Below, piece after piece: positions 13,532-46,019 of a stretch of 64,000 nt of DNA (position 1 is its first letter; every line of letters starts with the position of its first letter). The position numbers and the translations under genes were made by a program. The stretch covers positions 248,001-312,000 of IMG/VR virus record IMGVR_UViG_3300042482_000702, one strand, 5' to 3'. A model generated the notes under the pieces. It was given only the letters and a program-made list of their open reading frames with translations. It searched no databases and was not told the origin of the DNA.

Positions 13532-13940
13532 GGGAGTGACACGGAATTGACTATTCGTAATAGTTATTCGGGGCACGTAGTGAGATGTTCTCTATCACTT
13601 AAATCTATGGGTACAACAATTTAGACGGAAACGTTTTAAACAAAATGGCTCTAGTAGGTCTTGTACGTCAAGATGAGCTTGTGAACGTAGCGTAAGCAAA
13701 CACACATTGGGGTCGACGGATATGTGTACCTAGCAACAGAAATATCTTAAGGTGTGATACCACCCGAAGAGTGTCAAGGTCTCGTTTGAGGGTCTACCTA
13801 TTAAAGTGAACCTCCCACAGTTGTAGGTAATGATGGAAAAATTAGAACCTTCTATTTGTCAGTTGAGAATTAACTGAATAAACGTGTAGTCCTTAATAGG
13901 TAATACAAATAACACTTGGGTTCGAGTCCCAACACTTCCA
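13532..13940 (+). ncRNA. ssrA: tmRNA
   Basis: Acceptor GGGAGTG/CACTTCC with G3-U70; 5' GGAATTGAC; T-arm TTGGG-TTCGAGT-CCCAA; internal tag ORF 13627..13695; smpB nearby. Confidence 0.92.
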
Positions 13941-14065
13941 CGTCCACTGGAGAGTCCCAACACCTCCACACAAAAAAGAGACCTAAATGGTCTCTTTTTT
14001 TATTGATAATCACCAATAAAAAAACCACCCGAAGGTGGCTTATTATCAGTTCAAATGTTTATTTT

Positions 14066-14492: not shown

Positions 14493-14930
14493 CTATTTCA
14501 AGTCCCTTTTCATATCTCTTTCGATGTCCCGAGATTTGATGGTATCTCGTTTATCGTATGTTTTCTTCCCTTTGGCAAGAGCAATTTCCATTTTAATTAA
14601 TCCGGTGTCGTTTATGAAGATACGATAAGGAACGATGGTTACACCATTGATTAACTCATTCTCCCACTTATTAAGTTCTTTTCGTTTGGCTAATAGTTTT
14701 CTATCCTTTACGGTCTCGTGGAAGGACCCAAACCCATAATCGGAGATATTCATCCCCTTTATAAATAACTCCCCCTCATTGAAATAACAATACCCTTCAG
14801 AGATGGATACCTTTCCCTGACGAATGGACTTTACCTCTGAACCAACTAGTTTGATTCCCACAATTAATGTCTGTAGGAATGAATACTCAAACTTGGCTTT
14901 CTTATTGACTATGTTAATTGAATTTTTCAT
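14493..14930 (-). CDS. smpB: SsrA-binding protein SmpB
   Basis: NKKAKFEY, GIKLVGSEVKSIR, RKLL, AKGKKTYDKR motifs. Confidence 0.97.
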   Translation of the reverse strand: MKNSINIVNKKAKFEYSFLQTLIVGIKLVGSEVKSIRQGKVSISEGYCYFNEGELFIKGMNISDYGFGSFHETVKDRKLLAKRKELNKWENELINGVTIVPYRIFINDTGLIKMEIALAKGKKTYDKRDTIKSRDIERDMKRDLK

Positions 14931-16136: not shown

Positions 16137-16147
16137 ATATAAAATAA

Positions 16148-34026: not shown

Positions 34027-34308
34027 AATTTCCTTATTTTATTTTTTATGTTTATTGAACTTCTCTTCGTTGGTATCAATTCCAACTCAAATGCCACTTT
34101 GGACACGAGAACCTCAGCAACAAGGTTTCATTTATAAATATAAGGATGTTTTGTTTTATTGTAAATAAAAAACCCCCAAGTTTCCTCGGAGGTTCTATGT
34201 AGGAGTTCTCGGGTATCTACACTGATTAACGACAATCAGACCATCGTTCGCGACCTGTAAGAGTCCAACGACTGATATTATACTATACTTACACTCAAAT
34301 ATCTATTG

Positions 34309-34381
34309 TGGTCCCGGAGAATTACGATATCCCGACTTCTACATTATGAGTGTAGCACTCTAACCTCTGAGTTACGAGACC
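34309..34381 (-). tRNA. tRNA CAT (Ile2 or Met)
   Basis: Cloverleaf; loop CTCATAA; T-loop ATCGTAA. Confidence 0.8.
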
Positions 34382-34421
34382 AATTATGGGTTTTTAATGA
34401 ACCCATAAAACATATGTCAAT

Positions 34422-34655
34422 TTATTGGTGGTGCTTAATGTACCTCCCAAATTTATCAACCCTCACAGAGAGTTTCTCCAATCTAAAGTTCCAATTATCG
34501 AACTTTCCTAAGCCAGATTTTACTCTCGCCTGTTTAACCGCAGATACTTCTGCCTTCTCACGTCCTTCTTCCGTAGTTTCTACGAAAAAAGTGGGAGCCT
34601 GAACACCAGTCTTACTGGTAGGGACTACTCTCCAAATTCTCAATTTCTGAGTCAT
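34422..34655 (-). CDS. Small hypothetical protein in tRNA array
   Basis: ORF track. Confidence 0.55.
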   Translation of the reverse strand: MTQKLRIWRVVPTSKTGVQAPTFFVETTEEGREKAEVSAVKQARVKSGLGKFDNWNFRLEKLSVRVDKFGRYIKHHQ

Positions 34656-34830
34656 AAATTTTAGCTAATAGCTAAAACTATGTGGAGTTGGGTTGGTTGT
34701 TTTTCATATTAATTAGTTTAATTTTTTAAATAAAATGATGTTTAAATCTCCAAGTAAAAAAAAATACTGTTATTAGTAGTATTATCTTTATTACCTTAAT
34801 AATCTTTTTTCCCATATTGATAATATTTTG

Positions 34831-34915
34831 TATCCGGAGAGGGACTTGAACCCTCAATCTCCTTTCGGAAAACTAGATTTTAAGTCTAGCGTGTATACCA
34901 TTTCACCACCCAGAT
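34831..34915 (-). tRNA. tRNA-Leu(TAA)
   Basis: Loop CTTAAAA; long variable arm with GAAA. Confidence 0.9.
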
Positions 34916-35135
34916 GTGTTCCCCCAATGAGATTAGTTTGGGGTAGAATTTTTTCGGTTTTTCTATTCAAAAGTCGAGACGGTCTTACCCGCACATAAAA
35001 GTCAACTATTACTTGGAGGTGAGTTAGTATGCTCCCTTTTTTCCAAAGACCTCATCTATCAAACCGTTTGAGGCGTCAGCTACATCTTTGTTTAAGAAAC
35101 GATGCCAAATCTCTTGAGTATCTCTATCTCAATTG

Positions 35136-35216
35136 AGCTTCCGGTTGGATTCGAACCAACGTGCCATTCGGTCCTACTTACAAAATAGGTGCAATCAACC
35201 ACTATGCGACGGAAGC
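35136..35216 (-). tRNA. tRNA-Thr(TGT) with enlarged variable region
   Basis: Loop TTTGTAA; 12-nt variable region. Confidence 0.85.
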
Positions 35217-35426
35217 CTGTTGCAGAGTATTTTTTTTAAGTAGAAGTCAACTCTGTCTCTTAAACTACTAAAAGAAACTGTCCAAGGTCTATCCTGCTTT
35301 CGCTGTCCAGATTTTTCTCTGTTTCTTAAAACATCATCACTTCGGCCACATTGGGAGAACCGCAGTTCCCACGTTGTTTAAGGAGGTAGTTGGCGGTGTA
35401 TCACACCGAGTTATGATAATGTATTG

Positions 35427-35500
35427 TACCCCCAGTGAGAGTCGAACTCACAAAACTCTTCATCCTAAGTGAAGCGACTTTCCCGTTTGTCCACAGGGGT
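35427..35500 (-). tRNA. tRNA-Leu(TAG) with short variable loop
   Basis: Loop CTTAGGA; variable region AGTTTT. Confidence 0.85.
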
Positions 35501-35562
35501 AAATTGATGGGACTTTAACCCATCTGTTGACTATAACAAAAACATAAAGAAAGAAAAATTAG

Positions 35563-35684
35563 TAGTGTAGATAGGAATCGAACCTACCTCGATGAATTAC
35601 TTGTAATATGCACCAACTCTTCTCTCCAATCCTAGTATTAAGGAGTGTTACCTACAAATTACCATCACTCAACCCTTTTACACC
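35563..35684 (-). ncRNA. tRNA-like RNA: acceptor and T-arm, no D-stem, long irregular helix in place of the anticodon arm
   Basis: GGTGTA/TACACT; GTAGG-TTCGATT-CCTAT; GATG GTAATTTGTA ... TACAAGTAATT CATC. Confidence 0.6.
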
Positions 35685-35689
35685 ATTTG

Positions 35690-35761
35690 TGACTCCACAG
35701 GGATTCGAACCCCGATAATTTCCTTAGAAGAGAAATGTCCTATCCGTTGAACGATGGAGCC
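35690..35761 (-). tRNA. tRNA-Arg(TCT)
   Basis: Loop CTTCTAA. Confidence 0.9.
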
Positions 35762-35766
35762 AATTT

Positions 35767-35984
35767 ATTCTGTTACCGACATAGATTGGTAATTAAGTGT
35801 GAAAGCCCAAACCCTTTCACTCCCGTATTATCATCCTGCCACATTCTTGACGAATGCCGACGTTTTCACTTAACCTTCCGTTAGACATGCGAATCTATGT
35901 TTTCTGTATGTGGTGAGTAACTTCCTTCCCCACTTGTGTTTCCGAGATATCGAGGGCACCATACTGTCTAACGTCAAACAGAAT
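35767..35984 (-). ncRNA. Candidate ~220-nt pseudoknotted ncRNA
   Basis: Terminal 8-bp stem plus two crossing 9-bp helices. Confidence 0.55.
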
Positions 35985-36194
35985 ATAATTTTTAAAATAG
36001 TTTGACCAAATTTTTCACCATTGCGGTCTTAAGGAGCTATGACTTCATCTCCATGTCCGTTATGGGTAATTACTCCCAGATGGATGACCGGTGCGCCGTT
36101 GTCTTTCATCATACTTTTCACCAACCTATGTGTTAAAGGGTTCCGGCAGTGTCCCCGAAGGTTACTTCATATAATTACTTTTTCACTATTTTTG

Positions 36195-36266
36195 AGCGAA
36201 TGGAGGGAATCGAACCCTCATCCCTTGATTGGAAGTCAAGAGTAATGACCATTATACGACATTCGC
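36195..36266 (-). tRNA. tRNA-Gly(TCC)
   Basis: Loop CTTCCAA; U73. Confidence 0.92.
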
Positions 36267-36399
36267 AGTTTAGATGAACTTCGGACTTGTGTACCGAAAT
36301 GAGACCCAATAATTAAATCACTAACCCCGGGTGTGGTCTATTCATCTATTTTTTTAAGCTTATACCTTTAAAATAAATTTTAATTTTAAGCTTATAAGC

Positions 36400-36573
36400 T
36401 TAAACTTTCGTTTTAAGGTTGTTAATCTCCTTCTCGATTCTTTTCTTATCAGAATCAGTTAAAGGAATCTTGGTATTCATAGTACCCTTTTCGGTTTTTA
36501 CACCATTTTTTAATTGTTTCTCCAACACTTCAAGAACTCTTTGTTGTCTTGACCTTTTCGCTGCTGTTGCCAT
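36400..36573 (-). CDS. Small basic protein (57 aa, not in ORF track)
   Basis: MATAAKRSRQQRVLEVLEKQLK...INNLKTKV. Confidence 0.55.
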   Translation of the reverse strand: MATAAKRSRQQRVLEVLEKQLKNGVKTEKGTMNTKIPLTDSDKKRIEKEINNLKTKV

Positions 36574-36595
36574 ACGGATTTAGTTATTAAATTAG

Positions 36596-36668
36596 TAGCG
36601 TAGGGCAGGTAACGCTCCTGCTTTGGTCGGCTTATGAGACCGATGAGATACTATACCTCCCCCTCGCG
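36596..36668 (-). tRNA. tRNA-Met(CAT), initiator-like
   Basis: C1 mismatched with position 72; loop CTCATAA; T-loop AGCGTTA. Confidence 0.7.
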
Positions 36669-36683
36669 ATGTATTATTTTTTG

Positions 36684-36755
36684 CGGTCTATGAGAGAATC
36701 GAACTCTCATCTCTACCGTGACAGGGTAGCATCCTAGCCGTTGAACGAATAGACC
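36684..36755 (-). tRNA. tRNA-Asp(GTC)
   Basis: Loop CTGTCAC; G73. Confidence 0.92.
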
Positions 36756-36896
36756 AAAATTTTCAATCCAAAGGTGACAAACCTATAACAATTGAAAGAG
36801 AAAGAACCGTGTTTCCCGGGTAGTGACTTCCCGTATTCTGTCTTCCTGTTTTGTTTTACAAAGATAGTTATTAAATCTTTAATAACCAATTTTTTT

Positions 36897-37502
36897 TTAC
36901 ACCATTTTATTAAGTGTTGGTAAATACCATTTAAATCTCACCGCCATTACTCTAACTGATATAATCACTAATGAAGTGGTTAAATATAACACATCTGAGT
37001 TTAGGTTAAATTTCCTAAGTATGAAGAACACAATCCCCCCTAATATACAAATGGTAGCATATATTTCTTTTTTAAAGATAACCGGTATTTCAGCACATAG
37101 AATATCTCTAATCACACCACCAAAACAAGCGGTCATTGTACCTAATGCGATACATATAATGGGATGTAGACCAATGTTTATTCCTTTTTCTAACCCAATC
37201 AATGTGAATACCCCTAAACCGATTGTATCAAATATAAAAAGATATATTTTAAATTTCTCTATTAGTTGTTTGAATAATAATGTTACTATAAACCCTGTTA
37301 TTATTACATAGATATAATCTATGTTGAGCATCCATCCCACCGGTGTTCTTCCAATCATTACATCTCTCAGTGTTCCTCCACCTAATGCGGTTACGAATGT
37401 AATTATAAACACACCAAATAAATCCATTTTTTTATCTATGGATACTAAAGCTCCGGATATGGCAAATGCCAGTGTTCCTATTAGGTCTAATAAATTAAAC
37501 AT
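36897..37502 (-). CDS. TRIC/UPF0126 (YadS-like) membrane protein
   Basis: Duplicated GTLAFAISGA...GGGTLRD and GLGVF...FGGVIRD repeats. Confidence 0.9.
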   Translation of the reverse strand: MFNLLDLIGTLAFAISGALVSIDKKMDLFGVFIITFVTALGGGTLRDVMIGRTPVGWMLNIDYIYVIITGFIVTLLFKQLIEKFKIYLFIFDTIGLGVFTLIGLEKGINIGLHPIICIALGTMTACFGGVIRDILCAEIPVIFKKEIYATICILGGIVFFILRKFNLNSDVLYLTTSLVIISVRVMAVRFKWYLPTLNKMV

Positions 37503-37549
37503 TAATCATTTATTTTAAATTAATTGGTCTTAACAATAGACCTTTTTTG

Positions 37550-37621
37550 TGGAGCTACACGGTAACGCTCCGTGTTCTATGATTTGCAAAACCATTGTAA
37601 TTGCTTTTATACGACAGCCCC
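37550..37621 (-). tRNA. tRNA-Ala(TGC)
   Basis: G3-U70; loop TTTGCAA; T-loop AGCGTTA. Confidence 0.85.
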
Positions 37622-37682
37622 AATTTTGGATAGATGAGGTTCTATCCGGACCAGTACCTTCTCCCTTGGGAGATGTCAGTTG

Positions 37683-37754
37683 TAGCCCCACCGGGAGTCG
37701 AACCCGACTTTTATGGATGAAAACCATATGTCCTAACCGATAGACGATAGGGCC
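37683..37754 (-). tRNA. tRNA-Glu(TTC)
   Basis: Loop TTTTCAT. Confidence 0.9.
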
Positions 37755-38108
37755 GTTTTGTATTACCAATATGTCAATTAACTTGTTTGTTTTTGATGGT
37801 ACAAAGATAATGCTTTATTTCATTCCACCAAACTTATTCTTCAATAATATTATTCAGAACCAAATCTAATGCGTGGTCTTCATCCCACTCTGATTCATCA
37901 ACAACATTTTTTAATCCGTAGGTTACTCCCAATATCGGTGAGTAATCCATAACCAATTCTTCTCTAATCATACCTGTTATTATTTTTTAGTTATTTTATC
38001 CACATATTTTTTACCTACGGCTACTAATAAAATAAAACATATCAATAATCCACTAATAATAACCACCAATTGTTCTCCTGTATATTCTTCCATATCTTTA
38101 ATTTGTTT

Positions 38109-38339
38109 TTACCAAGTATTGGTGTTATAAATACAAAACTCTGAACCCACTTGGGCGTTTCTCCAATCATTCGGATATAGATAAAATAATTTATCATCAC
38201 CGGTACATTCATTTCTAATTACAACAGAATAATCTCGTACTCTATTACTAACCACTAAACCACAATTACAACTCACATACTCATTAATAGAACAAGATAA
38301 GAATAGTGGGATAACTATAATTAAAATTAATTTTTTCAT
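38109..38339 (-). CDS. Small lipoprotein-like protein (start MKKLIL)
   Basis: Signal peptide ending FLSC; promoter at about 38357. Confidence 0.6.
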   Translation of the reverse strand: MKKLILIIVIPLFLSCSINEYVSCNCGLVVSNRVRDYSVVIRNECTGDDKLFYLYPNDWRNAQVGSEFCIYNTNTW

Positions 38340-38395
38340 AACCCTTTTATTTTTGACAAAGATACAACTTAATTTCATTCTACCAAATATAAATC

Positions 38396-38532
38396 AAAAA
38401 AAAAATCCACCTTTTTTTGAAGATGGATTTTTAAATATTTTTTTACTTAAATATATATCATACCATCGTCTTCCAAGTTGTATCTCTACCCTCAGTTCCC
38501 GCTATCGTAAGTAATATGTTTAAAGTTTGCAT
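38396..38532 (-). promoter_or_regulatory. Leader peptide (38458..38532) plus terminator: putative attenuator
   Basis: 24-aa ORF MQTLNILLTIAGTEGRDTTWKTMV; GAAGA/GATGG in the ORF can pair with the terminator arm CCATCTTC. Confidence 0.5.
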
Positions 38533-38662
38533 TTTTTGTGTTATTGTAATTTCTAATAAATATACGACATTTTGTGAAAGTGTCAAGTGGTTTTAAAATT
38601 ATTTTTTAAACTTAATCATAATTTAAGATATTTATAGTAAATAAACTTTTAAAAATTCAATT

Positions 38663-38833
38663 ATGAATAAAGAACAAATTTTTGGTGTTATTCGCCACGT
38701 ATTCACTGCCATTGGTGGTATTGTCATTGCACAAGGTTACATATCTGATAGTATGTACACTGAATTATCCGGAGCGATATTAACATTAACTGGTGTAATT
38801 TGGTCAATTGTTGCTAAAAAATCTACAGTATAA
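38663..38833 (+). CDS. Small two-TM putative holin (56 aa, not in ORF track)
   Basis: MNKEQIFGVIRHVFTAIGG...GVIWSIVAKK; TATTTATA upstream. Confidence 0.65.
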   Translation: MNKEQIFGVIRHVFTAIGGIVIAQGYISDSMYTELSGAILTLTGVIWSIVAKKSTV

Positions 38834-39597
38834 TAAACAGAAAAAGGTTAGAGAAATCTAACCTTTTTTTATGCCTTTAAGTTAAATAAAAAAAAGCTTA
38901 ACAACCCCGCCCTCGGGTCGTAGCGGGCAACTTGAGAATTACTTCTCGTGGGAATTCCGGAATTGGTTGTGTTCCTCACCGGCGTACCAGTCCTTATCTA
39001 TCCTTTAACCGTATTTCTACGGTGCTACTGTTGGGAGGTCACCCCTATCAACACACCTAGTCCATTAGTTTTTTAGAGTATGGACACCCCGGTTGTTAAA
39101 CTTTTTAATTTAATATTCTCTTACATAACGGCGATTATCGCCGGTATTAACCTAATTGGTAAATAAAAAAACAGACAATGGGGATTCTCCGATATTTCAG
39201 TCTTAGGGGACTAGACGGGCATCATACCCGTGTTTACCCTCGGCGGTCTCTTGGTTTGGTTGATTACTCCAAACCTCACCCCTACACTACCACTGACGTA
39301 AGTTATAGGTCTGTTTTTAATTCTTTGTAAAACAACAGACGGCTTTGAAGTACATCCACACCAACAATTATGACCGACTTCACCTTATGTGGAAGTTTAG
39401 TTTTACAATATCTATCAAGATTTACCCCAGTCTTTAGGTCGCTATTAATACCTTTAACCCATACTCTCGGAACACTATGGAGATGGAATCAAACCATCTA
39501 ATAACCCGTCGGTTATAGCGTCAGCCTTATATTTCCTATCTTTTGGAGATAACTTTCGTCTGTCACCTTATTCAACCTTATATGAATAAATCTTTTG

Positions 39598-39704
39598 CCC
39601 TTCCAGTGGGAATCGAACCCACATACTCTTAATACATTCTTGGAATGGTTACCGGAGGGAGATGTATTCGTCTCTGTGTTTTGCTCTTTTTAAACTACAG
39701 AAGG
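39598..39704 (-). ncRNA. tRNA-like RNA with an expanded anticodon arm
   Basis: Acceptor CCTTCTG/TGGAAGG; D- and T-arms present; about 55-nt central region with AATACAT/ATGTATT helix. Confidence 0.55.
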
Positions 39705-39710
39705 ATTTTG

Positions 39711-39781
39711 CACGTTTGATAGGTCTCGAACCCATACAAATTCTTTTGGAGAGAATTATGCTACCATTACATCACAAACGT
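39711..39781 (-). tRNA. tRNA-Trp(CCA)
   Basis: Loop CTCCAAA. Confidence 0.9.
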
Positions 39782-39782
39782 A

Positions 39783-40430
39783 TTATTTTAACCATTTTCT
39801 AACAGCGTTATCACTAACACCATATTTACGACCTGTTCCTCTATACCCAAGATTAATAATATCTTGTTTTATTTGTTCTATGGACGGTCTTTCAACTTTT
39901 CTATTTTGTTTATTTGAACATTTAATACATTTATCACTTTTTTTATCTTTTGTACTACCACATTCACAATGATATTTAATTTTATTGGATTTCCCGGAAT
40001 ATGTACTAGTTTGGGAGTGACAATTAGGACATAAAAATCTTAAATTTTCTATTCTATTATCATTATTAACTCCATTTATATGGTCTAAATGTAGACTAAT
40101 ATTTTTACCATTCCACACCCCATTATTACCACATTCAATACATTTATATTCAAGTAAATTTTTCTTTAATATTCTATTTTTAATTTTTTGTCTTGGAAAT
40201 GTTGAATTTTCAACAAAAACATCCTCATCTAATCTAACCTCTTTAGGTCCAGTCCCATAATAATTATATTTAGGAATCTCTAATCCCAATTTAATTATTC
40301 TATCTTTAATGTTCCTATAACCACCCGAACCATTTGGTGATAAATTAAATAATAAAATAACCTCTCTCATAGATTTTGAATTATTCAAAATTTCAAATAA
40401 CTCTTCTTTTGTAATAGTTTTTAAGTTCAT
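39783..40430 (-). CDS. HNH homing endonuclease inside the tRNA array
   Basis: CIECG...LHLDHINGVNNDNRIENLRFLCPNCHSQT; C-terminal HTH. Confidence 0.9.
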   Translation of the reverse strand: MNLKTITKEELFEILNNSKSMREVILLFNLSPNGSGGYRNIKDRIIKLGLEIPKYNYYGTGPKEVRLDEDVFVENSTFPRQKIKNRILKKNLLEYKCIECGNNGVWNGKNISLHLDHINGVNNDNRIENLRFLCPNCHSQTSTYSGKSNKIKYHCECGSTKDKKSDKCIKCSNKQNRKVERPSIEQIKQDIINLGYRGTGRKYGVSDNAVRKWLK

Positions 40431-40661
40431 ATTATGTCTTTTATTATAAATATCTTAAAAAATACCAAAGTTCACCATAACCTATGTTTTACCAAAAATA
40501 ATAACATAATCATTCGTAGTCCCCTGCCGGGCAACCCTCCTACTTTTTCACACAATCCGGATGCCTCCAAATCTAATTTTCTTTTTTACCCCTATTAAGA
40601 AACGCGTTTTCCGTTCGGTAGTTCAAGCCCATTTTCGTGAGTTAAATAATTATGTTATTTG

Positions 40662-40744
40662 AGTTCAGGGTCGGATTCGAACCGACGAGGACTTTCGTCA
40701 TTGGTTTTGCAGACCAATCTAATCAACCACTCTAGCACCTGAAC
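40662..40744 (-). tRNA. tRNA-Cys(GCA) with long variable arm
   Basis: Loop CTGCAAA; U73; GAC-GAAA-GTC variable hairpin. Confidence 0.88.
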
Positions 40745-40805
40745 ATTTAAAGTAAAATATAATTTACAAATACACCCATTTTTGTAAATTATATTTAATG
40801 TTAAT

Positions 40806-41186
40806 TTAATAACCTATTTCATCTTTAACCTCCCATTGTTTATCAATGGGGATTCTTTCAATCTTTTCCACCGGAACAAATCCGTCAAATCCTTTGTCTT
40901 TAACATCTTCAAAATGTTCTATGGTGTCCAAGTAAAATCCAAATTGATATCTAACGTATTGGAACTTCTCTCCGTCCCAATAAGCGACGTGGTTGTTTCT
41001 ACAGAAACCATTATACCACCCCTCAACCATTTCATTTTTTGGTATCATCATTTCTATTTTTATATTAGCACCCTTGTCTATATAGCCTGAATCTCTCAAG
41101 CGCCATGCCTTATTAGGGTCTCTATATAAACTTAGGGTCACGTAGTTACTGGATGAACCCAAATAACTTACTTGCTGAGAACTCAT
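40806..41186 (-). CDS. Hypothetical protein (true start probably downstream, near MIPKNEM)
   Basis: ORF; the annotated 5' end overlaps an RNA motif. Confidence 0.55.
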   Translation of the reverse strand: MSSQQVSYLGSSSNYVTLSLYRDPNKAWRLRDSGYIDKGANIKIEMMIPKNEMVEGWYNGFCRNNHVAYWDGEKFQYVRYQFGFYLDTIEHFEDVKDKGFDGFVPVEKIERIPIDKQWEVKDEIGY

Positions 41187-41250
41187 TTGTGTTGATAGAG
41201 GCGTTCTCTATACGTTTAATTTACCTATTCCTTTCTCAAGGGAACAACAC
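41171..41250 (-). ncRNA. Pseudoknotted scaffold RNA, copy A
   Basis: GTGTTGTTCCCTTGAGAAAGGAA-[insert]-AACACAAATGAGTTCTCAG. Confidence 0.65.
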
Positions 41251-41547
41251 ATCTACCATTTCTGATAGTATCTTTATGTAAATAACCAAGACAATTGTAC
41301 AAATGCTACCACGTATTTCTTTGGTTCACTTATTATTTACAAAGGTTTCAATGTTTAACCTATTTTTACAACGATACAATTACATTTCTACTTTTGAGAA
41401 TCTTTCTCAAAAAAACTAATCTTTTTCTATGATTAACATACTCATCAGCATCATTGGCTTTATGACCTCTAAATATTGATTCGGTTATCTCACAATCCAA
41501 TTTAATAATTTCGGTTATTATCTCCTCCGTGGTTAAATTACTTTTTT

Positions 41548-41871
41548 TCATATCTTCTCAAATTCGTCTTCAAATCCGTACCACTCATCACCATTTTCAT
41601 CTTCGTACCAACATTTGTATTCTCGCTCGTACCGATTCCAATCAATTCTTGTTAATTCAACTTCATTTCCCCCATCTTTGTTTATAACCACTTCACCCAC
41701 TTGGAATGTTTGTGGTGCGTAATTGTCGATTGTTTTACTTTGAATAATTAAATCTCCAACACTTTTAACCTCATCGGTTTGGATATTGGTGTAATTTCCT
41801 CCGGATGATAATTTCCACCCTTTACTATACAACCAAATCGTAAAATCTAAAATTTCTTTTTCTAATAACAT
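41548..41871 (-). CDS. Hypothetical protein
   Basis: ORF downstream of a TAnnTTTG promoter at about 41893. Confidence 0.55.
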   Translation of the reverse strand: MLLEKEILDFTIWLYSKGWKLSSGGNYTNIQTDEVKSVGDLIIQSKTIDNYAPQTFQVGEVVINKDGGNEVELTRIDWNRYEREYKCWYEDENGDEWYGFEDEFEKI

Positions 41872-41903
41872 AATACATCTGTTTTGTGAGTACAAAGATA
41901 ATA

Positions 41904-42236
41904 CTATTTTTTACCCAATCCTACAATCGTAACACTTTTAATCTTTTTTTTACCTTTTTTAACTTTTTTCTCAACTTTTGGTTGGGAAACTCTACTTTGT
42001 TTCGCCAATACCTTCCTTGTTCTTTTACACATTTTTTCTAAAATCTCCAATGATTCAAGATTCTTAAAGAAAACAGTTAGAAGTTCTTCCGATTCGTCTG
42101 AAGAATAAATATTATCACCAATCATTCTTGGTTTTAATAATTTATTAAAACTAATAAATGGTGTTTGAGTAATATTCTCAATTCCCGCACCCATAGACAA
42201 TTCTCCCAATCCCGCAACAACAATACTTTTTTTCAT
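41904..42236 (-). CDS. Hypothetical protein
   Basis: ORF track. Confidence 0.55.
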   Translation of the reverse strand: MKKSIVVAGLGELSMGAGIENITQTPFISFNKLLKPRMIGDNIYSSDESEELLTVFFKNLESLEILEKMCKRTRKVLAKQSRVSQPKVEKKVKKGKKKIKSVTIVGLGKK

Positions 42237-42297
42237 AATTTTTATATATTTAATTTCGACAAAGATAATACAATTTTTTAAACTACCAAACTTTATT

Positions 42298-42807
42298 TTA
42301 AAAAAATAAATAAGGTTCCCATTCTTTTGGGATATCGTGATGAACTTGTTTCATTAACATCAGATAATGTGGTCGTCTTGGTTGAGGTATGTCTTTACCA
42401 TATTCCTCTAACGTCAAATTGGACTTCTCACCGTTACATCTCCTACAAGCGGTAACCAAGTTGTCCCAACTATCTTTACCCCCCTTAGATTGGGGTACTA
42501 CATGGTCTAATGTTAATGTCTTTCTGTTATTACACCCACAATATACACATTCAAAGTTATCTCTACGATAAACATTCTCTCTATTTAAAGGAACTTTTTG
42601 TATGATTTGATTAACATACTTATATACCCGAATGATTGATGGTTTTTTGATGTCCAATTCAGGATTTACTAATTTGAATGATTCCGGATGTTCGTTTATA
42701 ACATCGGCATTACCTTTATAAGAAATGACGAAAGCCCTCTCTGTGGAAATAATACTCCTCGCCATGAAACTTGAATCTAAAACCAAAGTTTTTTGGTAAC
42801 TACTCAC
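42298..42807 (-). CDS. HNH endonuclease (McrA-like)
   Basis: RDNFECVYCG...TLDHVVPQSKGGKDSWDNLVTACRRCN. Confidence 0.9.
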   Translation of the reverse strand: MSSYQKTLVLDSSFMARSIISTERAFVISYKGNADVINEHPESFKLVNPELDIKKPSIIRVYKYVNQIIQKVPLNRENVYRRDNFECVYCGCNNRKTLTLDHVVPQSKGGKDSWDNLVTACRRCNGEKSNLTLEEYGKDIPQPRRPHYLMLMKQVHHDIPKEWEPYLFF

Positions 42808-42837
42808 GATTTCTAATTTTTAATTAAACATTTTTTT

Positions 42838-43437
42838 TTACTCTAAACTATCAGGATAGTATAAAAGTGTTGGATTTTTCTTTTGGATGTCTATCTCCGG
42901 AAATTTTTCTTGGAATTTTCTAACATCAAATTTTCTGGTAATTAAATGAACACCATTTTTTGTTGGGATGACAGCCTCAACTTTATCACCAACCGGTTGT
43001 AAAACAATTAGAAATTTTGACACTTCAAAAAGAGTATCAAAATCTTTAGTATCAATATCTACAATCCATCTTTTTTCCTGTGTCTTAATTTGACCCACAA
43101 CCGAATCAAATAAACCTTTTTGGTTTTGAACCCCATTTTTGATTCTCTCAGCAAGAAGTGCTAACATATCCAAAGATACATCACGATGATTTTGTTTTTG
43201 GATGTGGATGTAAGCTCTCGCTTTAAACATCTCACATAATTGGATAATCTCATCATACCTTTTCTCCAAATGCTCAATACTATCAATACAGTAAGTTTTA
43301 ATTGTTCTTACTGATTGGTGATTGTCCCTCTCATCGATGGGTTGGTCTTTTTTACGCTTAAAAACATATAACATATAAAAATCACCCTTTTCGGAGAAAT
43401 TTAACAATGGTTTCAGTTGTTCGATGTTGTTTATCAT
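42838..43437 (-). CDS. Conserved phage protein with AEP/PrimPol-like DxD and TxxGxH motifs
   Basis: WIVDIDTKD and PTKNGVHLI. Confidence 0.5.
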   Translation of the reverse strand: MINNIEQLKPLLNFSEKGDFYMLYVFKRKKDQPIDERDNHQSVRTIKTYCIDSIEHLEKRYDEIIQLCEMFKARAYIHIQKQNHRDVSLDMLALLAERIKNGVQNQKGLFDSVVGQIKTQEKRWIVDIDTKDFDTLFEVSKFLIVLQPVGDKVEAVIPTKNGVHLITRKFDVRKFQEKFPEIDIQKKNPTLLYYPDSLE

Positions 43438-43453
43438 TATTTCTATTTTTTTG

Positions 43454-43524
43454 TTCCCCCAGGTGGTATCGAACCAACTTCCCGATATTAAAAGTATCGT
43501 GCTTCACCTTAAAGCTTTGGGGGA
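43454..43524 (-). tRNA. tRNA-Lys(TTT)
   Basis: Loop CTTTTAA. Confidence 0.88.
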
Positions 43525-43606
43525 GTTTGAGCTCATTTCACTTTGTTATTTGGCTCAAAACATAACTAATTTGAGCTTAATAATCAAAGTTTGTGAGCCA
43601 CATTTG

Positions 43607-43678
43607 TTGTTCCGGTAGGATTTGAACCTACGACCGCTGAAGTATCAGTTCAGAACTCTACCGCTGAGTTACGGAACA
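43607..43678 (-). tRNA. tRNA-Ile(GAT)
   Basis: Loop CTGATAC. Confidence 0.9.
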
Positions 43679-43684
43679 ATATTG

Positions 43685-43756
43685 TCGGGATAGCAGGGGT
43701 CGAACCTGCCGCCTCTTGGTCCCAAACCAAGCGTCTCACCCCAAGACTATATCCCG
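43685..43756 (-). tRNA. tRNA-Pro(TGG)
   Basis: C1-G72; loop TTTGGGA. Confidence 0.9.
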
Positions 43757-43827
43757 AATAATAAACTACCACCTGACTCTTTTCGAACTTTGCAGGCTCG
43801 TATCATTCCCTAATGGTAGTTATTTTG

Positions 43828-43901
43828 TCTAAATGACTGGACTCGAACCAGCGGTCTCTACATTCCAAGTGTAGCGGATTAACCAACTTTCCCACATCTA
43901 G
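43828..43901 (-). tRNA. tRNA-Pro(TGG), second copy
   Basis: Loop CTTGGAA (A37 instead of G37). Confidence 0.85.
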
Positions 43902-43920
43902 ATTTTAATTTTATTTTCTG

Positions 43921-44006
43921 CGGAGAGCAGAATACTTGAAATCCATCCCTTTTACAGAACCACTCGCTTAGCAGGCGGTGACAATACCCTGATTGTTTTA
44001 CTCTCC
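43921..44006 (-). tRNA. tRNA-Ser(GCT)
   Basis: Loop CTGCTAA; long variable arm; G73. Confidence 0.8.
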
Positions 44007-44012
44007 ATTTTG

Positions 44013-44084
44013 TGTCCCCAAGAGGATTCGAACCCCTATCTCTGATGCCGTAAATCAAAATTCTATCCGTTGAACTATGGTGAC
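44013..44084 (-). tRNA. tRNA-Arg(ACG)
   Basis: Loop TTACGGC. Confidence 0.8.
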
Positions 44085-44088
44085 AATT

Positions 44089-44208
44089 TGAGGTTGAGAA
44101 CTCCTCTGTGTTGTGTGTTTAAGACTAACTTTTTATACACTAAATAGGACTTACGCAAGTAGGTTGGCCTAATTTTAATACTTAATTCCCCTCTCACAGG
44201 AACAACAC
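44089..44208 (-). ncRNA. Pseudoknotted scaffold RNA, copy B
   Basis: GTGTTGTTCCTGTGAGAGGGGAA-[~73 nt]-AACACAGAGGAGTTCTCAACCTCA. Confidence 0.65.
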
Positions 44209-44213
44209 GGCTG

Positions 44214-44303
44214 TGAGGTTGAGAACTCCTCTGTGTTAGTCTTTACTAGTTAATTGCAATAACCGTGTAGCCACTCTATTTTCCCCTCTCACAGGAACAA
44301 CAC
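44214..44303 (-). ncRNA. Pseudoknotted scaffold RNA, copy C
   Basis: Same 23-nt and 24-nt flanks as copy B, with a different ~43-nt insert. Confidence 0.65.
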
Positions 44304-44306
44304 ATT

Positions 44307-44495
44307 TTACTTCCATTGAGTTTTTCGGTTATACTTCCAAGTTTTATGTTCTCTGTATTTGTGAGAGAACTGACCTCTTCTATAATGAACACCCTCATCC
44401 CAATAAGGTGGATATTCAAACTTTAACCAAATTACTCTGTAATCTTTGGAACAAGTTGCCTTGTTCAGTTTCATTCTGTTTGTGTTTACACTCAT
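44307..44495 (-). CDS. Small basic hypothetical protein
   Basis: C-terminal TWKYNRKTQWK. Confidence 0.6.
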   Translation of the reverse strand: MSVNTNRMKLNKATCSKDYRVIWLKFEYPPYWDEGVHYRRGQFSHKYREHKTWKYNRKTQWK

Positions 44496-44545
44496 AATCT
44501 TGAGTCTGTTGTTTAGCAGACCTCAAAGATTATCCAATACCTTTT

Positions 44546-44803
44546 TCATAACCGTAATTTATAAATTCTTTTATAATCATCCATCGCCGACTTCAGATTT
44601 ACAATACATTCTCGGTAATTAACATTATCACCAAGATTAAATCTTTCATTTTCTTGTTCCCTCTTGAATAACACTTTCAATGAATTATCAATGTTAGATA
44701 GAATGTCCAAGTAAATCATTTCCTTATCTTTGGATTTTTTTAAATCAAATTTCAAATCAACAATTAGACCTTCTAATTCTTCAATTTTTTTATCTTCATC
44801 CAT
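44546..44803 (-). CDS. Small coiled-coil protein
   Basis: ORF track. Confidence 0.55.
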   Translation of the reverse strand: MDEDKKIEELEGLIVDLKFDLKKSKDKEMIYLDILSNIDNSLKVLFKREQENERFNLGDNVNYRECIVNLKSAMDDYKRIYKLRL

Positions 44804-44817
44804 AACAAATAATTTTG

Positions 44818-44890
44818 GGAGTTAGTTCGGTATCGAACCGAATTCTTTGGTACCACAAACCAACGCTTCACCGTTAAAGCTTCAAACTCC
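44818..44890 (-). tRNA. tRNA-His(GTG)
   Basis: Encoded G-1 pairing with C73; loop TTGTGGT. Confidence 0.9.
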
Positions 44891-44954
44891 ATATTACCCC
44901 ACTTCCCCGGCTTAACGGACCGAGTGCCATATAGGAGGTGTGGGGGTAACCTCG

Positions 44955-45026
44955 CTCCTCCGGGTGGGATTGAACCACCATGATTTGATTAACAGTCAAA
45001 CATAATTACCATTATATGACAGAGGA
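44955..45026 (-). tRNA. tRNA-Asn(GTT)
   Basis: Loop CTGTTAA; G73. Confidence 0.9.
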
Positions 45027-45176
45027 AGATATGACCACTATGTTATTTTGCGAACGTATGAAGCTCGTATCATTGTTAAGTCATAGTAGTCCAAGGCGTT
45101 ACGCACCCATCTGGTAACTTTACTTCTCTTGAGTCCGGGTAAGCGCTTACCAACTCGGGGGTTGTTTCCTTGTTTG

Positions 45177-45249
45177 TGGGGACTACCGGTTACGCTCCGG
45201 TCTCCTTGATTCTTCAGACCAATGCTTTCACTAGATTAGCTTAATCCCC
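45177..45249 (-). tRNA. tRNA-Phe(GAA)
   Basis: Loop CTGAAGA; T-loop AGCGTAA. Confidence 0.85.
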
Positions 45250-45392
45250 AATTAAAATGATGGTGAGATACCCGTTTCGTCTCACTCTTGACTGCTTAAT
45301 AGTAGTTTTACTGTGCACAGGCAGAGGGTTATAATTTCGTTTATTGTAATCAGAATTGTCGACATTCTTTCATACAGAAATTCATCATTTTG

Positions 45393-45473
45393 TGGGACAC
45401 TATGGAATCGAACCATACCCTACTACAGAACGGTGTTACAGACCGCTTATCACACCAGTGACTGAAGCATCCC
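45393..45473 (-). tRNA. tRNA-Tyr(GTA)
   Basis: Loop CTGTAAC; variable arm. Confidence 0.85.
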
Positions 45474-45479
45474 TTTTTG

Positions 45480-45550
45480 TACCTCGTGATGGTTATGCTC
45501 CACCGCCATTTGTATGTAAAACAAATACGCTCCTATTACGCCAACGAGGT
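45480..45550 (-). tRNA. tRNA-Val(TAC)
   Basis: Loop TTTACAT; T-loop AGCATAA. Confidence 0.8.
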
Positions 45551-45643
45551 AAATAAAATTAACAATTGCTATCAGGATTTAAACGTCGCTCAGAATACTT
45601 ACTGACGCCCACCGATTGGGTACGATGACTAGTTAATTTTTTG

Positions 45644-45715
45644 TACCGATGGGTGGGATTGAACCACCGACACCTTCCGTATGAAAGAAGTGCTCTACCA
45701 CTGAGCTACATCAGT
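45644..45715 (-). tRNA. tRNA with CAT anticodon (Met/Ile2)
   Basis: Canonical cloverleaf; loop TTCATAC. Confidence 0.8.
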
Positions 45716-45769
45716 ATTTTGGTGGATATAGGCTCATCACCTATTCGTGGGTTTCCACCGAACCCCTCG

Positions 45770-45841
45770 TTACCCCTAATGGAATCGAACCACTCCCGCA
45801 TGGACCAAAACCATGTGTACTAACCGATATACGAAGGGGCA
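45770..45841 (-). tRNA. tRNA-Gln(TTG)
   Basis: U1-A72; loop TTTTGGT. Confidence 0.88.
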
Positions 45842-45847
45842 AAATTG

Positions 45848-45929
45848 CGGAAGAGACAGGATTCGAACCTGCAAAGCTGTTACACCCGATAGTTTTCAAG
45901 ACTACTTAACGACCACTGTCCACTCTTCC
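45848..45929 (-). tRNA. tRNA-Ser(TGA)
   Basis: Loop CTTGAAA; long variable arm; G73. Confidence 0.88.
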
Positions 45930-46019
45930 ATTTTATTCTTACCAATATGTCAAATAACTAATTCCTTTATTTTGATGGGACAAAGGTAATCCTTTTTTTT
46001 TAACTTCCAAACTTTTTTA

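What the first reader, a model, noticed from the sequence alone, without database searches (positions are those of the whole stretch)
35563..35684. Mini tmRNA-like RNA: a tRNA-like domain without an mRNA domain
Acceptor and T-arm are intact, the D region is an unpaired AAGGGTTGA loop reminiscent of the tmRNA GGAxTTGAC, and a long helix replaces the anticodon arm. It lacks G3-U70. It could be a second SmpB ligand or an EF-Tu/ribosome decoy. A related oddity with an expanded anticodon arm lies at 39598-39704.
Basis: partly seen in the sequence, partly recalled or inferred. Interest (0 to 1): 0.6.

Follow-up and report, generated by a model that had tools for sequence, protein, structure and literature searches.

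The report
Conserved tRNA-mimic RNA in phage tRNA array
A 122-base gene in the tRNA cluster of a large freshwater phage encodes a conserved RNA with the top half of a tRNA and a long conserved hairpin in place of the anticodon arm; it is a new RNA family of unknown function, not a small tmRNA.

Summary
Window 35563-35684 (minus strand) has a 6-bp acceptor stem (plus an A·C mismatch), a canonical T arm (loop UUCGAUU) and an unpaired GGG-containing D region. A 79-nt irregular helix sits where the anticodon arm should be. It lies 5 nt after tRNA-Arg(UCU) in a large tRNA array and has tRNA-like flanks.

Ten lake-metagenome contigs and one further viral contig carry copies, 91-100% identical pairwise, in the same Arg(UCU)→Leu(UAG) slot. 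The flanking tRNAs there are only about 75% identical.

A covariance model found diverged homologues in three more phage contigs. They keep the long helix (8 pairs with compensatory changes), an invariant 7-nt cap AUACUAG, an AGUA-containing internal loop and a T-like hairpin. They lack an acceptor stem.

It is therefore a real structured RNA family, absent from Rfam. The tRNA-like ends are specific to this sub-lineage.

It is not a tmRNA: no G3·U70, no tag frame, no pseudoknots, no model hit. It is also not an intron-bearing tRNA.

The phage does encode a true tmRNA and its own SmpB. SmpB binding is untested and cannot be excluded, but SmpB is far more widespread than this element.

The closest known analogue is T4 species 1 RNA (rnaC). 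My best guess is a processed, stable tRNA-elbow mimic that binds a tRNA-handling factor.

The parts
35563..35684 (-). Whole tRNA-mimic RNA gene, 122 nt, from G1 to discriminator A. A C follows at 35562.
   Evidence: Sequence read. CM R1 scores it 152 bits. Copies 91-100% identical pairwise, with the same ends, occur in 11 other loci.
35678..35684 (-). 5' acceptor strand GGUGUAA (RNA positions 1-7).
   Evidence: Pairs with 35564-35570: six pairs plus an A·C mismatch. Invariant in the window-type copies. Absent from the L023/L034-type homologues.
35672..35677 (-). Unpaired D-like region AAGGGU (positions 8-13). There is no D stem.
   Evidence: AAA(A/U)GGGUUGA is conserved in all three sub-types. 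That the GGG docks on the T loop is inference.
35593..35671 (-). Long irregular helix replacing the anticodon arm (positions 14-92). Helices: 14-18/88-92, 23-32/73-82, 35-38/68-71, 40-43/58-61.
   Evidence: Consensus folding. Covariation: 8 pairs changed on both sides, none of 500 shuffles as high. Independent folds of L034 and L023 agree.
35632..35638 (-). Invariant 7-nt apical loop AUACUAG (positions 47-53). It has anticodon-loop format N-U-NNN-R-N and contains CUA.
   Evidence: Identical in the window type, L023/L051 and L034 while the stem below it changes.
35598..35602 (-). 3' side (AAGUA) of a conserved internal loop, opposite GAUG at 35663-35666. Possibly an S-turn/loop-E-like motif.
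   Evidence: CAAGUAAUUCA is invariant in all sub-types. The motif assignment is my inference from the AGUA/GA pattern.
35618..35623 (-). Purine-rich internal loop (positions 62-67), the most variable part.
   Evidence: AGAAGA, AGAAAG and CAAAAG variants occur among otherwise near-identical copies.
35588..35592 (-). 5-nt linker UCGAG (positions 93-97) between the long helix and the T arm, in the variable-loop position.
   Evidence: It reads AACAG in L023/L034. This rules out the alternative register 18-22/91-95.
35571..35587 (-). T arm: GUAGG / UUCGAUU / CCUAU (positions 98-114).
   Evidence: Exact T-loop consensus. G98·U becomes A-U in L011, and A-U becomes G-C in L023/L034.
35564..35570 (-). 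3' acceptor strand CUACACU (positions 115-121). Discriminator A is at 35563.
   Evidence: The downstream flank begins with C, as in the genuine tRNAs of the array.
35690..35761 (-). tRNA-Arg(UCU), the upstream neighbour. A 5-nt spacer CAAAU separates it from the element.
   Evidence: Arg(UCU) lies upstream of the element in every locus that reaches far enough.
35427..35500 (-). tRNA-Leu(UAG), the downstream neighbour.
   Evidence: The Arg(tct)→Leu(tag) adjacency is kept in about 35 related loci, with gaps of 7 to 902 nt.
35506..35524 (-). T-arm-like leader hairpin GAUGGG-UUAAAGU-CCCAUC just 5' of tRNA-Leu. It looks like a remnant or homologue of the T-like hairpin of the L034-type element.
   Evidence: Leaders aligned: ACAG-RUGGG-loop-CCCAY-CAAWW is shared by L004, L039, L043, L033, L034 and L023.
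39598..39704 (-). Second oddity: a tRNA-like gene with normal acceptor, D and T arms but 47 nt in place of the anticodon stem-loop.
   Evidence: Rfam tRNA 31.5 bits. It is 96.5-99% identical in L023, L051, L040 and L044 and absent from L004.
13532..13943 (+). The phage's genuine tmRNA (context, not part of the element).
   Evidence: Rfam RF00023, 62.3 bits; G3·U70 present.
14493..14930 (-). Phage-encoded SmpB, 145 aa (context; a candidate partner, untested).
   Evidence: Pfam PF01668, 159 bits, full length.

Best explanation
This is a genuine non-coding RNA gene on the minus strand, co-transcribed with the phage's tRNA array and cut out by the tRNA-processing machinery. RNase P would cut at G1, followed by 3' trimming and probably CCA addition, because the acceptor/T-arm minihelix and the flanks look like those of the neighbouring tRNAs.

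The mature RNA mimics the upper half of a tRNA. It has an acceptor stem stacked on a T arm, and an unpaired GGG strand that can dock on the T loop to form an elbow. Where the anticodon arm should be it carries a rod of roughly 30 stacked layers, with a conserved AGUA-containing internal loop and an invariant anticodon-loop-like cap, AUACUAG.

The rod is too long for decoding on the ribosome. I think the RNA most likely acts in trans as a stable tRNA-elbow mimic that binds, titrates or recruits a tRNA-handling factor. Candidates are a host tRNA-targeting nuclease or toxin, the phage's RNA repair/processing enzymes, or SmpB.

Shown: the gene is real, its structure, its conservation, and that it is neither a tmRNA nor a decoding tRNA. 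Inferred: its processing, its stability and the decoy/adaptor mechanism.
For: Anatomy.

Placement:
- Same strand as the tRNAs and 5 nt after tRNA-Arg(UCU).
- tRNA-like flanks: an A/U-rich leader, and a C after the discriminator, as in the genuine tRNAs.
- No promoter or terminator of its own stands out.

Conservation: among the 9 loci that also carry both flanking tRNAs, the element is 96-100% identical (91-100% over all 11 copies, one of them cut short by a contig end). The flanking tRNA-Arg and tRNA-Leu average 74-76%.

Substitutions fall mainly in loops or keep pairing.

Diverged homologues at the same slot score 49-52 bits with R1 and 95-106 bits with R2. With them, 8 pairs show compensatory changes, and none of 500 shuffles is as high.

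Three single-stranded motifs are invariant across sub-types: GGGUUGA, AUACUAG and CAAGUAAUUCA.

Its distribution is sporadic and therefore accessory. It was found in 5 IMG/VR contigs, while most relatives have only a 7-nt Arg-Leu spacer.

The window is rich in other tRNA mimics and RNA-handling genes: tmRNA, SmpB, two YrlA-like RNAs, GOLLD and a T4 Rnl1-like ligase.

T4 sets a precedent, with the stable RNAs rnaD and rnaC directly after tRNA-Arg in its tRNA cluster. rnaC has a T arm and an acceptor-like stem.
Against: - There are no expression or processing data.
- No partner has been identified.
- The high identity of the window-type copies is partly an ascertainment effect, because the metagenome pattern fixed 23 bases.
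- The acceptor stem never varies, so covariation does not support it.
- The acceptor-less homologues show that the tRNA-like ends are not essential to the family.
- L034/L023-type elements sit 5 nt upstream of tRNA-Leu, which would also fit a cis role in the precursor.
- Other intergenic segments of the array are also 97-100% identical between some loci, so recombination contributes to the pattern.
Confidence: 0.45

Rival explanations
1. One reading: a mini-tmRNA, meaning a tRNA-like domain plus a helix-2-like rod without a message. It would bind SmpB (the phage's or the host's) and enter stalled ribosomes, or titrate SmpB or EF-Tu.
For: - The D region has no stem, and its GG is followed by UUGA and then directly by a helix. 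This matches the Rfam tmRNA consensus and the phage's own tmRNA.
- The rod is of a length comparable to tmRNA helix 2 (my estimate).
- The phage encodes both a tmRNA and an SmpB about 21 kb away.
- SmpB contacts the elbow and D-loop side, not the acceptor end (established knowledge of TLD-SmpB structures, from memory). The acceptor-less relatives therefore do not exclude SmpB binding.
Against: - U3-A70 instead of G3·U70, so AlaRS would not charge it.
- No resume codon or tag frame and no pseudoknots.
- A 5-nt linker before the T stem, against about 1 nt in tmRNA.
- No tmRNA-family hit even at E <= 10.
- Relatives lack the acceptor, so A-site entry or EF-Tu binding cannot be the conserved role.
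- SmpB is present in at least 79 related contigs, including many without the element.
Confidence: 0.12
2. A cis-acting part of the tRNA precursor: a structured spacer or leader that guides or times processing of the neighbouring tRNA-Leu(UAG) or tRNA-Arg(UCU), or protects an upstream mRNA end. Under this reading the excised RNA is a by-product.
For: - It always sits in the Arg(UCU)→Leu(UAG) slot.
- In L034 and L023 the T-like hairpin ends 5 nt before tRNA-Leu.
- Many relatives keep only a homologous T-like hairpin at exactly that place.
- In L023 the element directly follows the stop codon of a small ORF.
Against: - In window-type loci the distance to tRNA-Leu ranges from 8 to about 760 nt.
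- Most relatives manage with a 7-nt spacer.
- An invariant apical loop and invariant internal loops far from either tRNA are hard to explain by a processing role alone.
Confidence: 0.15
3. A trans-acting binder of tRNA-Leu(UAG), analogous to T-box stem I. The CUA in the apical loop would pair with the UAG anticodon and the T-loop elbow would stack on the tRNA elbow.
For: The invariant loop AUACUAG contains the CUA codon followed by a purine. The gene is always next to tRNA-Leu(UAG), whose anticodon loop reads CUUAGGA. The element also has a T-loop module.
Against: - By my count about 34 stacked layers separate the loop from the elbow. That is clearly more than the anticodon-elbow distance of a tRNA unless the rod bends sharply.
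- A 3-nt match is expected by chance.
- No covariation test is possible, because neither the loop nor the anticodon varies.
Confidence: 0.06
4. An unusual decoding tRNA. For example a D-armless tRNA with anticodon ACU for AGY, or a tRNA carrying an intron that is removed.
For: - The loop has anticodon-loop format A-U-ACU-A-G.
- The window lacks tRNA-Ser(GCU) and tRNA-Ala(UGC).
- The layout (acceptor, connector, one arm, 5-nt linker, T arm) matches that of D-armless mitochondrial tRNAs.
Against: - No single deletion of 10-69 nt yields anything ARAGORN accepts as a tRNA.
- There is no Rfam tRNA hit.
- The arm is about six times the length of an anticodon stem, and covariation runs along its whole length, so it is not a removable insert.
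- Relatives lack an acceptor.
Confidence: 0.03
5. A decaying tRNA pseudogene, or a chance resemblance.
For: The element is absent from close relatives such as L004. Remnant-like hairpins exist in the same slot.
Against: - It is much more conserved than the functional tRNAs beside it.
- It shows compensatory changes.
- CM E-values are 1e-10 to 1e-21 for the diverged copies.
Confidence: 0.02

Closest known systems
Bacteriophage T4 species 1 RNA (rnaC), and species 2 RNA (rnaD)
   Same: - Small RNAs of 119-139 nt encoded inside a phage tRNA cluster on the tRNA strand, directly after tRNA-Arg.
- rnaC ends in a canonical T arm plus an acceptor-like stem and carries long hairpins in place of normal arms.
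- Like the target, rnaC draws only a weak tRNA-Sec hit from Rfam.
- Their function is unknown, and they are processed by tRNA enzymes (my knowledge, not tested here).
   Different: - No sequence or model similarity: R1 and R2 gave no hit on rnaC or rnaD in the T4 locus.
- rnaC has two hairpins, in the D and anticodon positions. The target has one long arm and an unpaired D region.
tRNA-like domain of tmRNA (RF00023)
   Same: Acceptor plus T arm, a D region without a stem whose GG is followed by UUGA, and a long helix leaving the core.
   Different: No G3·U70, no message, no pseudoknots, a longer linker before the T stem, and no model hit. Family members without an acceptor exist.
YrlA / bacterial Y RNA-like tRNA mimics (RF02553)
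   Same: tRNA-mimic module joined to a long conserved helix. Two YrlA-like RNAs occur in the same window.
   Different: YrlA has the opposite topology, with a closed acceptor hairpin and an open long stem, and it has a D arm. The target gives no YrlA hit. No Ro/TROVE protein was found among the window ORFs scanned.
D-armless mitochondrial tRNAs (e.g. tRNA-Ser(AGY))
   Same: Same order of parts: acceptor, unpaired connector, a single arm, a short variable loop, T arm.
   Different: The arm is about 79 nt instead of 17 nt, so decoding geometry is impossible. This comparison rests on general knowledge only.

Membership tests
tmRNA (RF00023) | Acceptor stem with G3·U70 (alanine identity) | tested here: not met
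   Position 3 pairs as U3-A. The phage's true tmRNA does have G3·U70.
tmRNA (RF00023) | T arm with a T loop adjoining the 3' acceptor strand | tested here: met
   GUAGG/UUCGAUU/CCUAU, followed directly by CUACACU-A.
tmRNA (RF00023) | D region without a stem, with GG followed by UUCGAC that leads into helix 2a | tested here: inconclusive
   GGGUUGAGU, with the helix starting at UGAGU, resembles the consensus GGaUUCGAC and the phage's GGAAUUGAC. The single-stranded part is shorter, 6 against 10 nt.
tmRNA (RF00023) | mRNA-like domain with a resume codon, tag frame and stop | tested here: not met
   122 nt in total. The only Ala-start mini-frame (GCA UAU YAC AAG UAA) is not conserved as a peptide, and its variable base covaries as a helix pair.
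tmRNA (RF00023) | Pseudoknots, and a match to the family covariance model | tested here: not met
   No tmRNA-clan hit at E <= 10 on 35500-35700 other than tRNA-Sec at 12 bits. The structure is a plain rod.
tmRNA (RF00023) | Binds SmpB | not testable with these tools
   The phage's SmpB is at 14493-14930. No RNA-protein test is available.
tRNA (RF00005) | Cloverleaf recognised by tRNA models | tested here: not met
   No ARAGORN call, with or without introns. No Rfam tRNA hit at E <= 10. No single deletion rescues it.
tRNA (RF00005) | Acceptor and T-arm minihelix with a discriminator and tRNA-like flanks | tested here: met
   This holds only in the window-type sub-lineage.
tRNA (RF00005) | D stem, and a 5-bp anticodon stem with a 7-nt loop at the decoding distance | tested here: not met
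   No D stem. A 7-nt loop of the right format sits at the tip of a 79-nt arm.
T4 rnaC-type stable tRNA-like RNA of phage tRNA clusters | Encoded within a phage tRNA cluster on the tRNA strand, with a T arm and acceptor-like ends and non-tRNA arms | tested here: met
   Target. T4.
T4 rnaC-type stable tRNA-like RNA of phage tRNA clusters | Sequence or structure homology to rnaC or rnaD | tested here: not met
   R1 and R2 gave no hit on rnaC or rnaD in locus L020; the only match was a weak one (17.7 bits, E 0.23) to a genuine tRNA.
T4 rnaC-type stable tRNA-like RNA of phage tRNA clusters | Accumulates as a stable, processed RNA | not testable with these tools
   No expression data are available.
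YrlA / Y RNA-like (RF02553) | Match to the family model, with permuted topology (closed acceptor hairpin, D arm, open Ro-binding stem) | tested here: not met
   No YrlA hit on the target. The topology is the reverse. The model does hit 16138-16233 and 15935-16043 below threshold.

The most novel reading that the evidence does not exclude
The phage carries a minimal tRNA-like-domain RNA that works with its own SmpB (or the host's) as a message-less partner. This could be a regulator or competitor of trans-translation, or a rescue factor that engages stalled ribosomes without tagging. The acceptor-bearing form in this lineage would then be a recent gain of chargeability. More broadly, it would be a new class of phage tRNA-elbow mimics that target a tRNA-binding machine.
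Probability: 0.1. Interest if true: 0.85.

Novelty: new variant of a known kind. Interest (0 to 1): 0.6.

Why it matters
Phage tRNA clusters are usually read as codon-supply or anti-defence cargo. T4's two extra stable RNAs in its tRNA cluster have, to my knowledge, had no assigned function for about fifty years.

This element shows that unrelated large freshwater phages also keep a non-decoding tRNA mimic in the same kind of place. It is conserved more strictly than the tRNAs beside it, and its structure is supported by covariation. That gives a second, comparative handle on what such RNAs do.

The window also has a phage-encoded tmRNA, SmpB, two Y-RNA-like mimics, GOLLD and an RNA ligase. 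Together these point to a phage toolkit built around tRNA-shaped RNAs. If the partner proves to be SmpB, a tRNA-targeting defence nuclease or an RNA-repair enzyme, it would define a new mode of phage-host interaction. If not, the element is still a clean candidate for a new Rfam family.

Tried and rejected
- **Intron-containing tRNA.** ARAGORN with introns allowed found nothing new. Deleting every 10-69-nt segment never produced a recognisable tRNA for the target. For the second oddity a few weak, inconsistent calls appeared.
- **Alternative helix register 18-22/91-95.** This would give a tmRNA-like 2-nt linker. It was rejected because 93-95 read AAC in L023/L034 while the proposed partners are unchanged.
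- **Cloverleaf with a giant D loop and a long variable arm.** Rejected because covariation pairs the 'D-loop' with the 'variable-arm' segments.
- **Hammerhead or HDV-like (theta) ribozyme.** There were no Rfam hits. The core motifs do not fit, and the rod structure is incompatible.
- **Anti-Shine-Dalgarno mimicry.** ACACUCCUUA resembles the 16S 3' end, but it is not conserved in L023/L034.
- **Pairing of the apical loop with CUAGUA at the start of the phage tmRNA tag frame.** This is only a 6-nt match, and other tmRNA variants of the group lack it. I treated it as chance.
- **Donor tRNA for the acceptor/T arm.** None was found among the held loci.
- **Cultured phages.** There was no homologue in 50,697 GenBank phage records.
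- **Bacterial and archaeal genomes.** A three-motif pattern gave no match.
- **Relaxed three-motif scan of IMG/VR.** It returned only chance matches beyond the five known contigs.
- **Literature.** Searches on phage tRNA-like decoys, GOLLD/tmRNA phages and T4 species 1 RNA gave nothing specific.
- **Second oddity.** Consensus folding was uninformative because the copies barely differ.

Full report
**What is there.** On the minus strand, window 35684→35563 reads as follows:
- A 5' strand GGUGUAA.
- An unpaired AAGGGU.
- A 79-nt interrupted hairpin (RNA positions 14-92).
- A 5-nt linker.
- A canonical T arm, GUAGG/UUCGAUU/CCUAU.
- A 3' strand CUACACU that pairs with the 5' strand (six pairs plus A·C), then discriminator A and a C.

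The gene lies 5 nt downstream of tRNA-Arg(UCU) and 62 nt upstream of tRNA-Leu(UAG). Both belong to an array of about 27 minus-strand tRNAs (34.3-45.9 kb).

The window comes from a 322-kb viral contig. That contig also carries a tmRNA, GOLLD RNA, a T4-type large terminase, an Rnl1-like RNA ligase and an SmpB gene.

Standard tRNA and tmRNA finders do not call the element. In E-value mode Rfam gives only a 12-bit tRNA-Sec match to the 3' half.

The exact T-loop word is strongly over-represented in the window, 21 occurrences against 1.3 expected, and the unannotated occurrences include this one.

**Is it more than chance?** Folding energy alone does not show it (z = -0.06). Comparison does.

An exact-pattern scan of metagenomes returned 10 contigs from lake and other aquatic samples with copies of the 122-nt unit. 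One further viral contig, L001, carries another. Every copy lies upstream of tRNA-Leu(tag), with tRNA-Arg(tct) further upstream, in each contig long enough to show them.

Pairwise identity of the element is 91-100% over all 11 copies, and 96-100% among the 9 loci that also carry both flanking tRNAs. Those flanking tRNAs average 74-76% and fall as low as 56-60%. Part of this contrast is ascertainment, because the pattern fixed 23 of 122 bases. The other 99 positions are almost as constant, and similarity stops at the gene's ends.

The few substitutions behave as expected for a structured RNA:
- A25-U80 in the window is G-C in all other copies.
- G98·U114 becomes A-U in L011.
- Most of the remaining changes fall in the apical loop or in one purine-rich internal loop. 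The exception is A78U in L001, which breaks one pair.

**Diverged relatives.** I fetched 59 loci from related phages through the 278-aa protein next to the array and searched them with a covariance model of the element.

Three loci gave strong hits at the same Arg(tct)→Leu(tag) slot: L023 and L051 (identical, 51.6 bits) and L034 (48.9 bits). A second model that included them raised these to 95-106 bits and found nothing else in 1.1 Mb.

These copies are much more diverged in sequence from the window's element (alignments). On the eight-sequence alignment:
- 96.8% of pair cells are standard pairs.
- 8 pairs show changes on both sides: 5 in the long helix's main stem, 1 in the upper stem and 1 in the T stem. 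The eighth, in the 'acceptor', is an artefact described below.
- None of 500 column shuffles reaches the observed values, and sliding the partners drops pairing to 29-47%.

L034 folds into the same architecture on its own with z = -3.8.

Four features are invariant or nearly so across all three sub-types:
- AAA(A/U)GGGUUGA(G/A)UGA.
- The 7-nt cap AUACUAG.
- CAAGUAAUUCA.
- The AG before the T stem.

The conserved internal loop (GAUG opposite AAGUA) has the AGUA/GA signature of an S-turn. That assignment is my inference.

**The acceptor stem is lineage-specific.** In L034 the element fills the whole 113-nt gap between the 3' end of tRNA-Arg and the 5' end of tRNA-Leu. The 'acceptor' pairs that the model reported there are borrowed from those two tRNAs. 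In L023/L051 the element begins right after the stop codon of a small lipoprotein-like ORF and ends 5 nt before tRNA-Leu, again without a 3' acceptor strand. Their T-like hairpin loop reads GUCGAG(A/C).

Most relatives have only a 7-nt Arg-Leu spacer. Others have 60-65 nt that end in a T-arm-like hairpin homologous to that of the L034-type element, and some have ORFs there.

The window itself carries both the tRNA-like element and that remnant-like hairpin (35506-35524). Its close relative L004 has only the hairpin, and the 127-nt difference is a clean indel bounded by the two discriminator-A/C junctions.

So the family's conserved core is the elbow-like module plus the rod. The window-type sub-lineage has, in addition, a perfect tRNA-style acceptor and the canonical UUCGAUU loop.

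**What it is not.**
- *Not a tmRNA.* It has U3-A70, no tag frame and no pseudoknots. Its linker before the T stem is 5 nt where tmRNA has about one, and there is no model hit. The true tmRNA at 13532-13943 has all of these features.
- *Not an intron-bearing or otherwise decoding tRNA.* No deletion of 10-69 nt yields a tRNA. Covariation runs along the whole arm. The loop sits roughly 34 stacked layers from the core, by my count.
- *Not a pseudogene*, given the conservation and the compensatory changes.
- *Not in Rfam 15*, nor in 50,697 cultured-phage records. A three-motif pattern also found nothing in one genome per prokaryotic species.

The resemblance of the D region to a tmRNA TLD is real but modest: GGGUUGAGU against the consensus GGaUUCGAC and the phage's GGAAUUGAC.

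The phage encodes its own SmpB at 14493-14930 (Pfam 159 bits), beside the tmRNA.

However, SmpB homologues occur in at least 79 viral contigs of this group. These include contigs whose Arg-Leu junction lacks the element, such as those behind L004, L026, L027, L037 and L038. The element was found in only five IMG/VR contigs.

The acceptor-less members rule out aminoacylation or EF-Tu binding as the family's conserved function. SmpB binding to the elbow side remains possible and untested.

**Closest known thing.** T4's tRNA cluster has tRNA-Arg followed at once by rnaD (species 2, 119 nt) and rnaC (species 1, 139 nt). rnaC ends in a canonical T arm and an imperfect acceptor-like stem, with long hairpins elsewhere. 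Like the target, it draws only a weak tRNA-Sec hit from Rfam. There is no detectable homology, so this is an analogue rather than a relative. That T4's RNAs are stable, are processed by tRNA enzymes and have no known function is my recollection, not a result obtained here.

**Most likely mechanism.**
- *Shown:* a conserved, structured, minus-strand RNA gene with tRNA-like ends and flanks, embedded in a tRNA operon without signals of its own.
- *Inferred:* it is released by RNase P and 3' processing, possibly receives CCA, and accumulates as a stable RNA. Its elbow, S-turn-like loop and invariant cap are the binding surfaces.

Its sporadic distribution, its strict conservation where it is present, and its company all fit a trans-acting mimic that binds or titrates a tRNA-handling factor. 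That company is tmRNA/SmpB, two YrlA-like tRNA mimics, GOLLD and an RNA ligase. I put about 0.45 on this class of mechanism. Within it I cannot choose between a host tRNA-targeting nuclease, phage repair or processing enzymes, and SmpB.

A cis role in precursor processing (0.15), the mini-tmRNA/SmpB reading (0.12) and a T-box-like binder of tRNA-Leu(UAG) (0.06) remain open.

**The second oddity (39598-39704).** It is a tRNA-like gene with good acceptor, D and T arms (Rfam tRNA 31.5 bits) and 47 nt in place of the anticodon stem-loop. It is 96.5-99% identical in four other contigs, two of which (L040, L044) have a neighbouring protein only 68-70% identical to the window's. L004 lacks it precisely. 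Its internal structure could not be resolved because the copies barely vary. It shares no sequence with the target beyond generic tRNA features.

**Verdict.** The tmRNA interpretation is only partly supported, in architecture and context but not in membership. The element is a new RNA family: a new variant of the little-understood 'extra stable RNAs' of phage tRNA clusters.

Noticed in passing
window 14493-14930 (-): Phage-encoded SmpB (145 aa, Pfam SmpB 159 bits) between the phage tmRNA (13532-13943 +) and GOLLD (15007-15413 -). Homologues occur in at least 79 IMG/VR contigs, so this phage group carries a complete trans-translation pair.
   Followed up: partly
window 16138-16233 (-) and 15935-16043 (-): Two circularly permuted tRNA-like modules hit the Rfam YrlA (Y RNA-like) model below threshold (41 and 26 bits; gathering score 69). 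They flank a tRNA and lie just upstream of GOLLD, possibly in one transcript. No Ro/TROVE protein was seen among the window ORFs scanned.
   Followed up: partly
window 16046-16136 (-): ARAGORN calls this 91-nt tRNA Pro(tgg). By my reading it is tRNA-Phe(GAA) with a hairpin of about 16-20 nt inserted in the D loop. Rfam tRNA scores it 49.6 bits with a 20-nt insert there.
   Followed up: partly
window 13502-13521 (+), 16249-16268 (-), 42256-42275 (-): A 20-nt motif, AAATGTATTATCTTTGTAGA, occurs twice exactly and once with 2 mismatches, against 0.06 expected. It lies upstream of the tmRNA, of the YrlA/tRNA/GOLLD block and of a small ORF, and is likely a phage promoter.
   Followed up: no
window 34300-45930 (-), all tRNA 3' flanks: Almost every tRNA of the array is followed by C-A-A-(A/U) after the discriminator rather than CCA. 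The first C is templated and the rest is not, which implies dependence on a CCA-adding enzyme. A weak nucleotidyltransferase-domain ORF lies at 7136-7882.
   Followed up: no
window 35136-35216 (-) and 40662-40744 (-): tRNA-Thr(tgt) (81 nt) and tRNA-Cys(gca) (83 nt) have long variable arms, which is unusual for class I tRNAs.
   Followed up: no
window 39598-39704 (-): The second tRNA-like oddity has internal segments complementary to both of its own acceptor strands. It can therefore fold either as a cloverleaf or as two hairpins. It is 96.5-99% conserved across four other contigs.
   Followed up: partly
window 35322-35424, 35992-36196, 36592-36672, 38886-39111: Several other intergenic segments of the tRNA array are 97-100% identical to some metagenome loci while the neighbouring tRNAs differ. 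The array is a recombination mosaic and may hold further conserved non-coding elements.
   Followed up: no
L023 7650-7935 and L033/L044 (Arg-Leu gap); L064/L071/L073: Small ORFs with signal-peptide or lipoprotein-like N-termini (MKK...LASC / ...LAALGC) are inserted between tRNA-Arg and tRNA-Leu in several relatives. An ORF of about 270 aa sits at the same hotspot in L045.
   Followed up: no
window 13640-13690 (+): By my reading the phage tmRNA tag frame is GCU CUA GUA ... GCG UAA (ALVGLVRQDELVNVA). Related phages carry a different tag (…AIGLIRAEEVVVA).
   Followed up: no
window 36897-37502 (-), 39783-40430 (-), 42298-42807 (-): Protein genes are interspersed in the tRNA array: a Gly_transporter/UPF0126-family membrane protein and two HNH endonucleases.
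   Followed up: no
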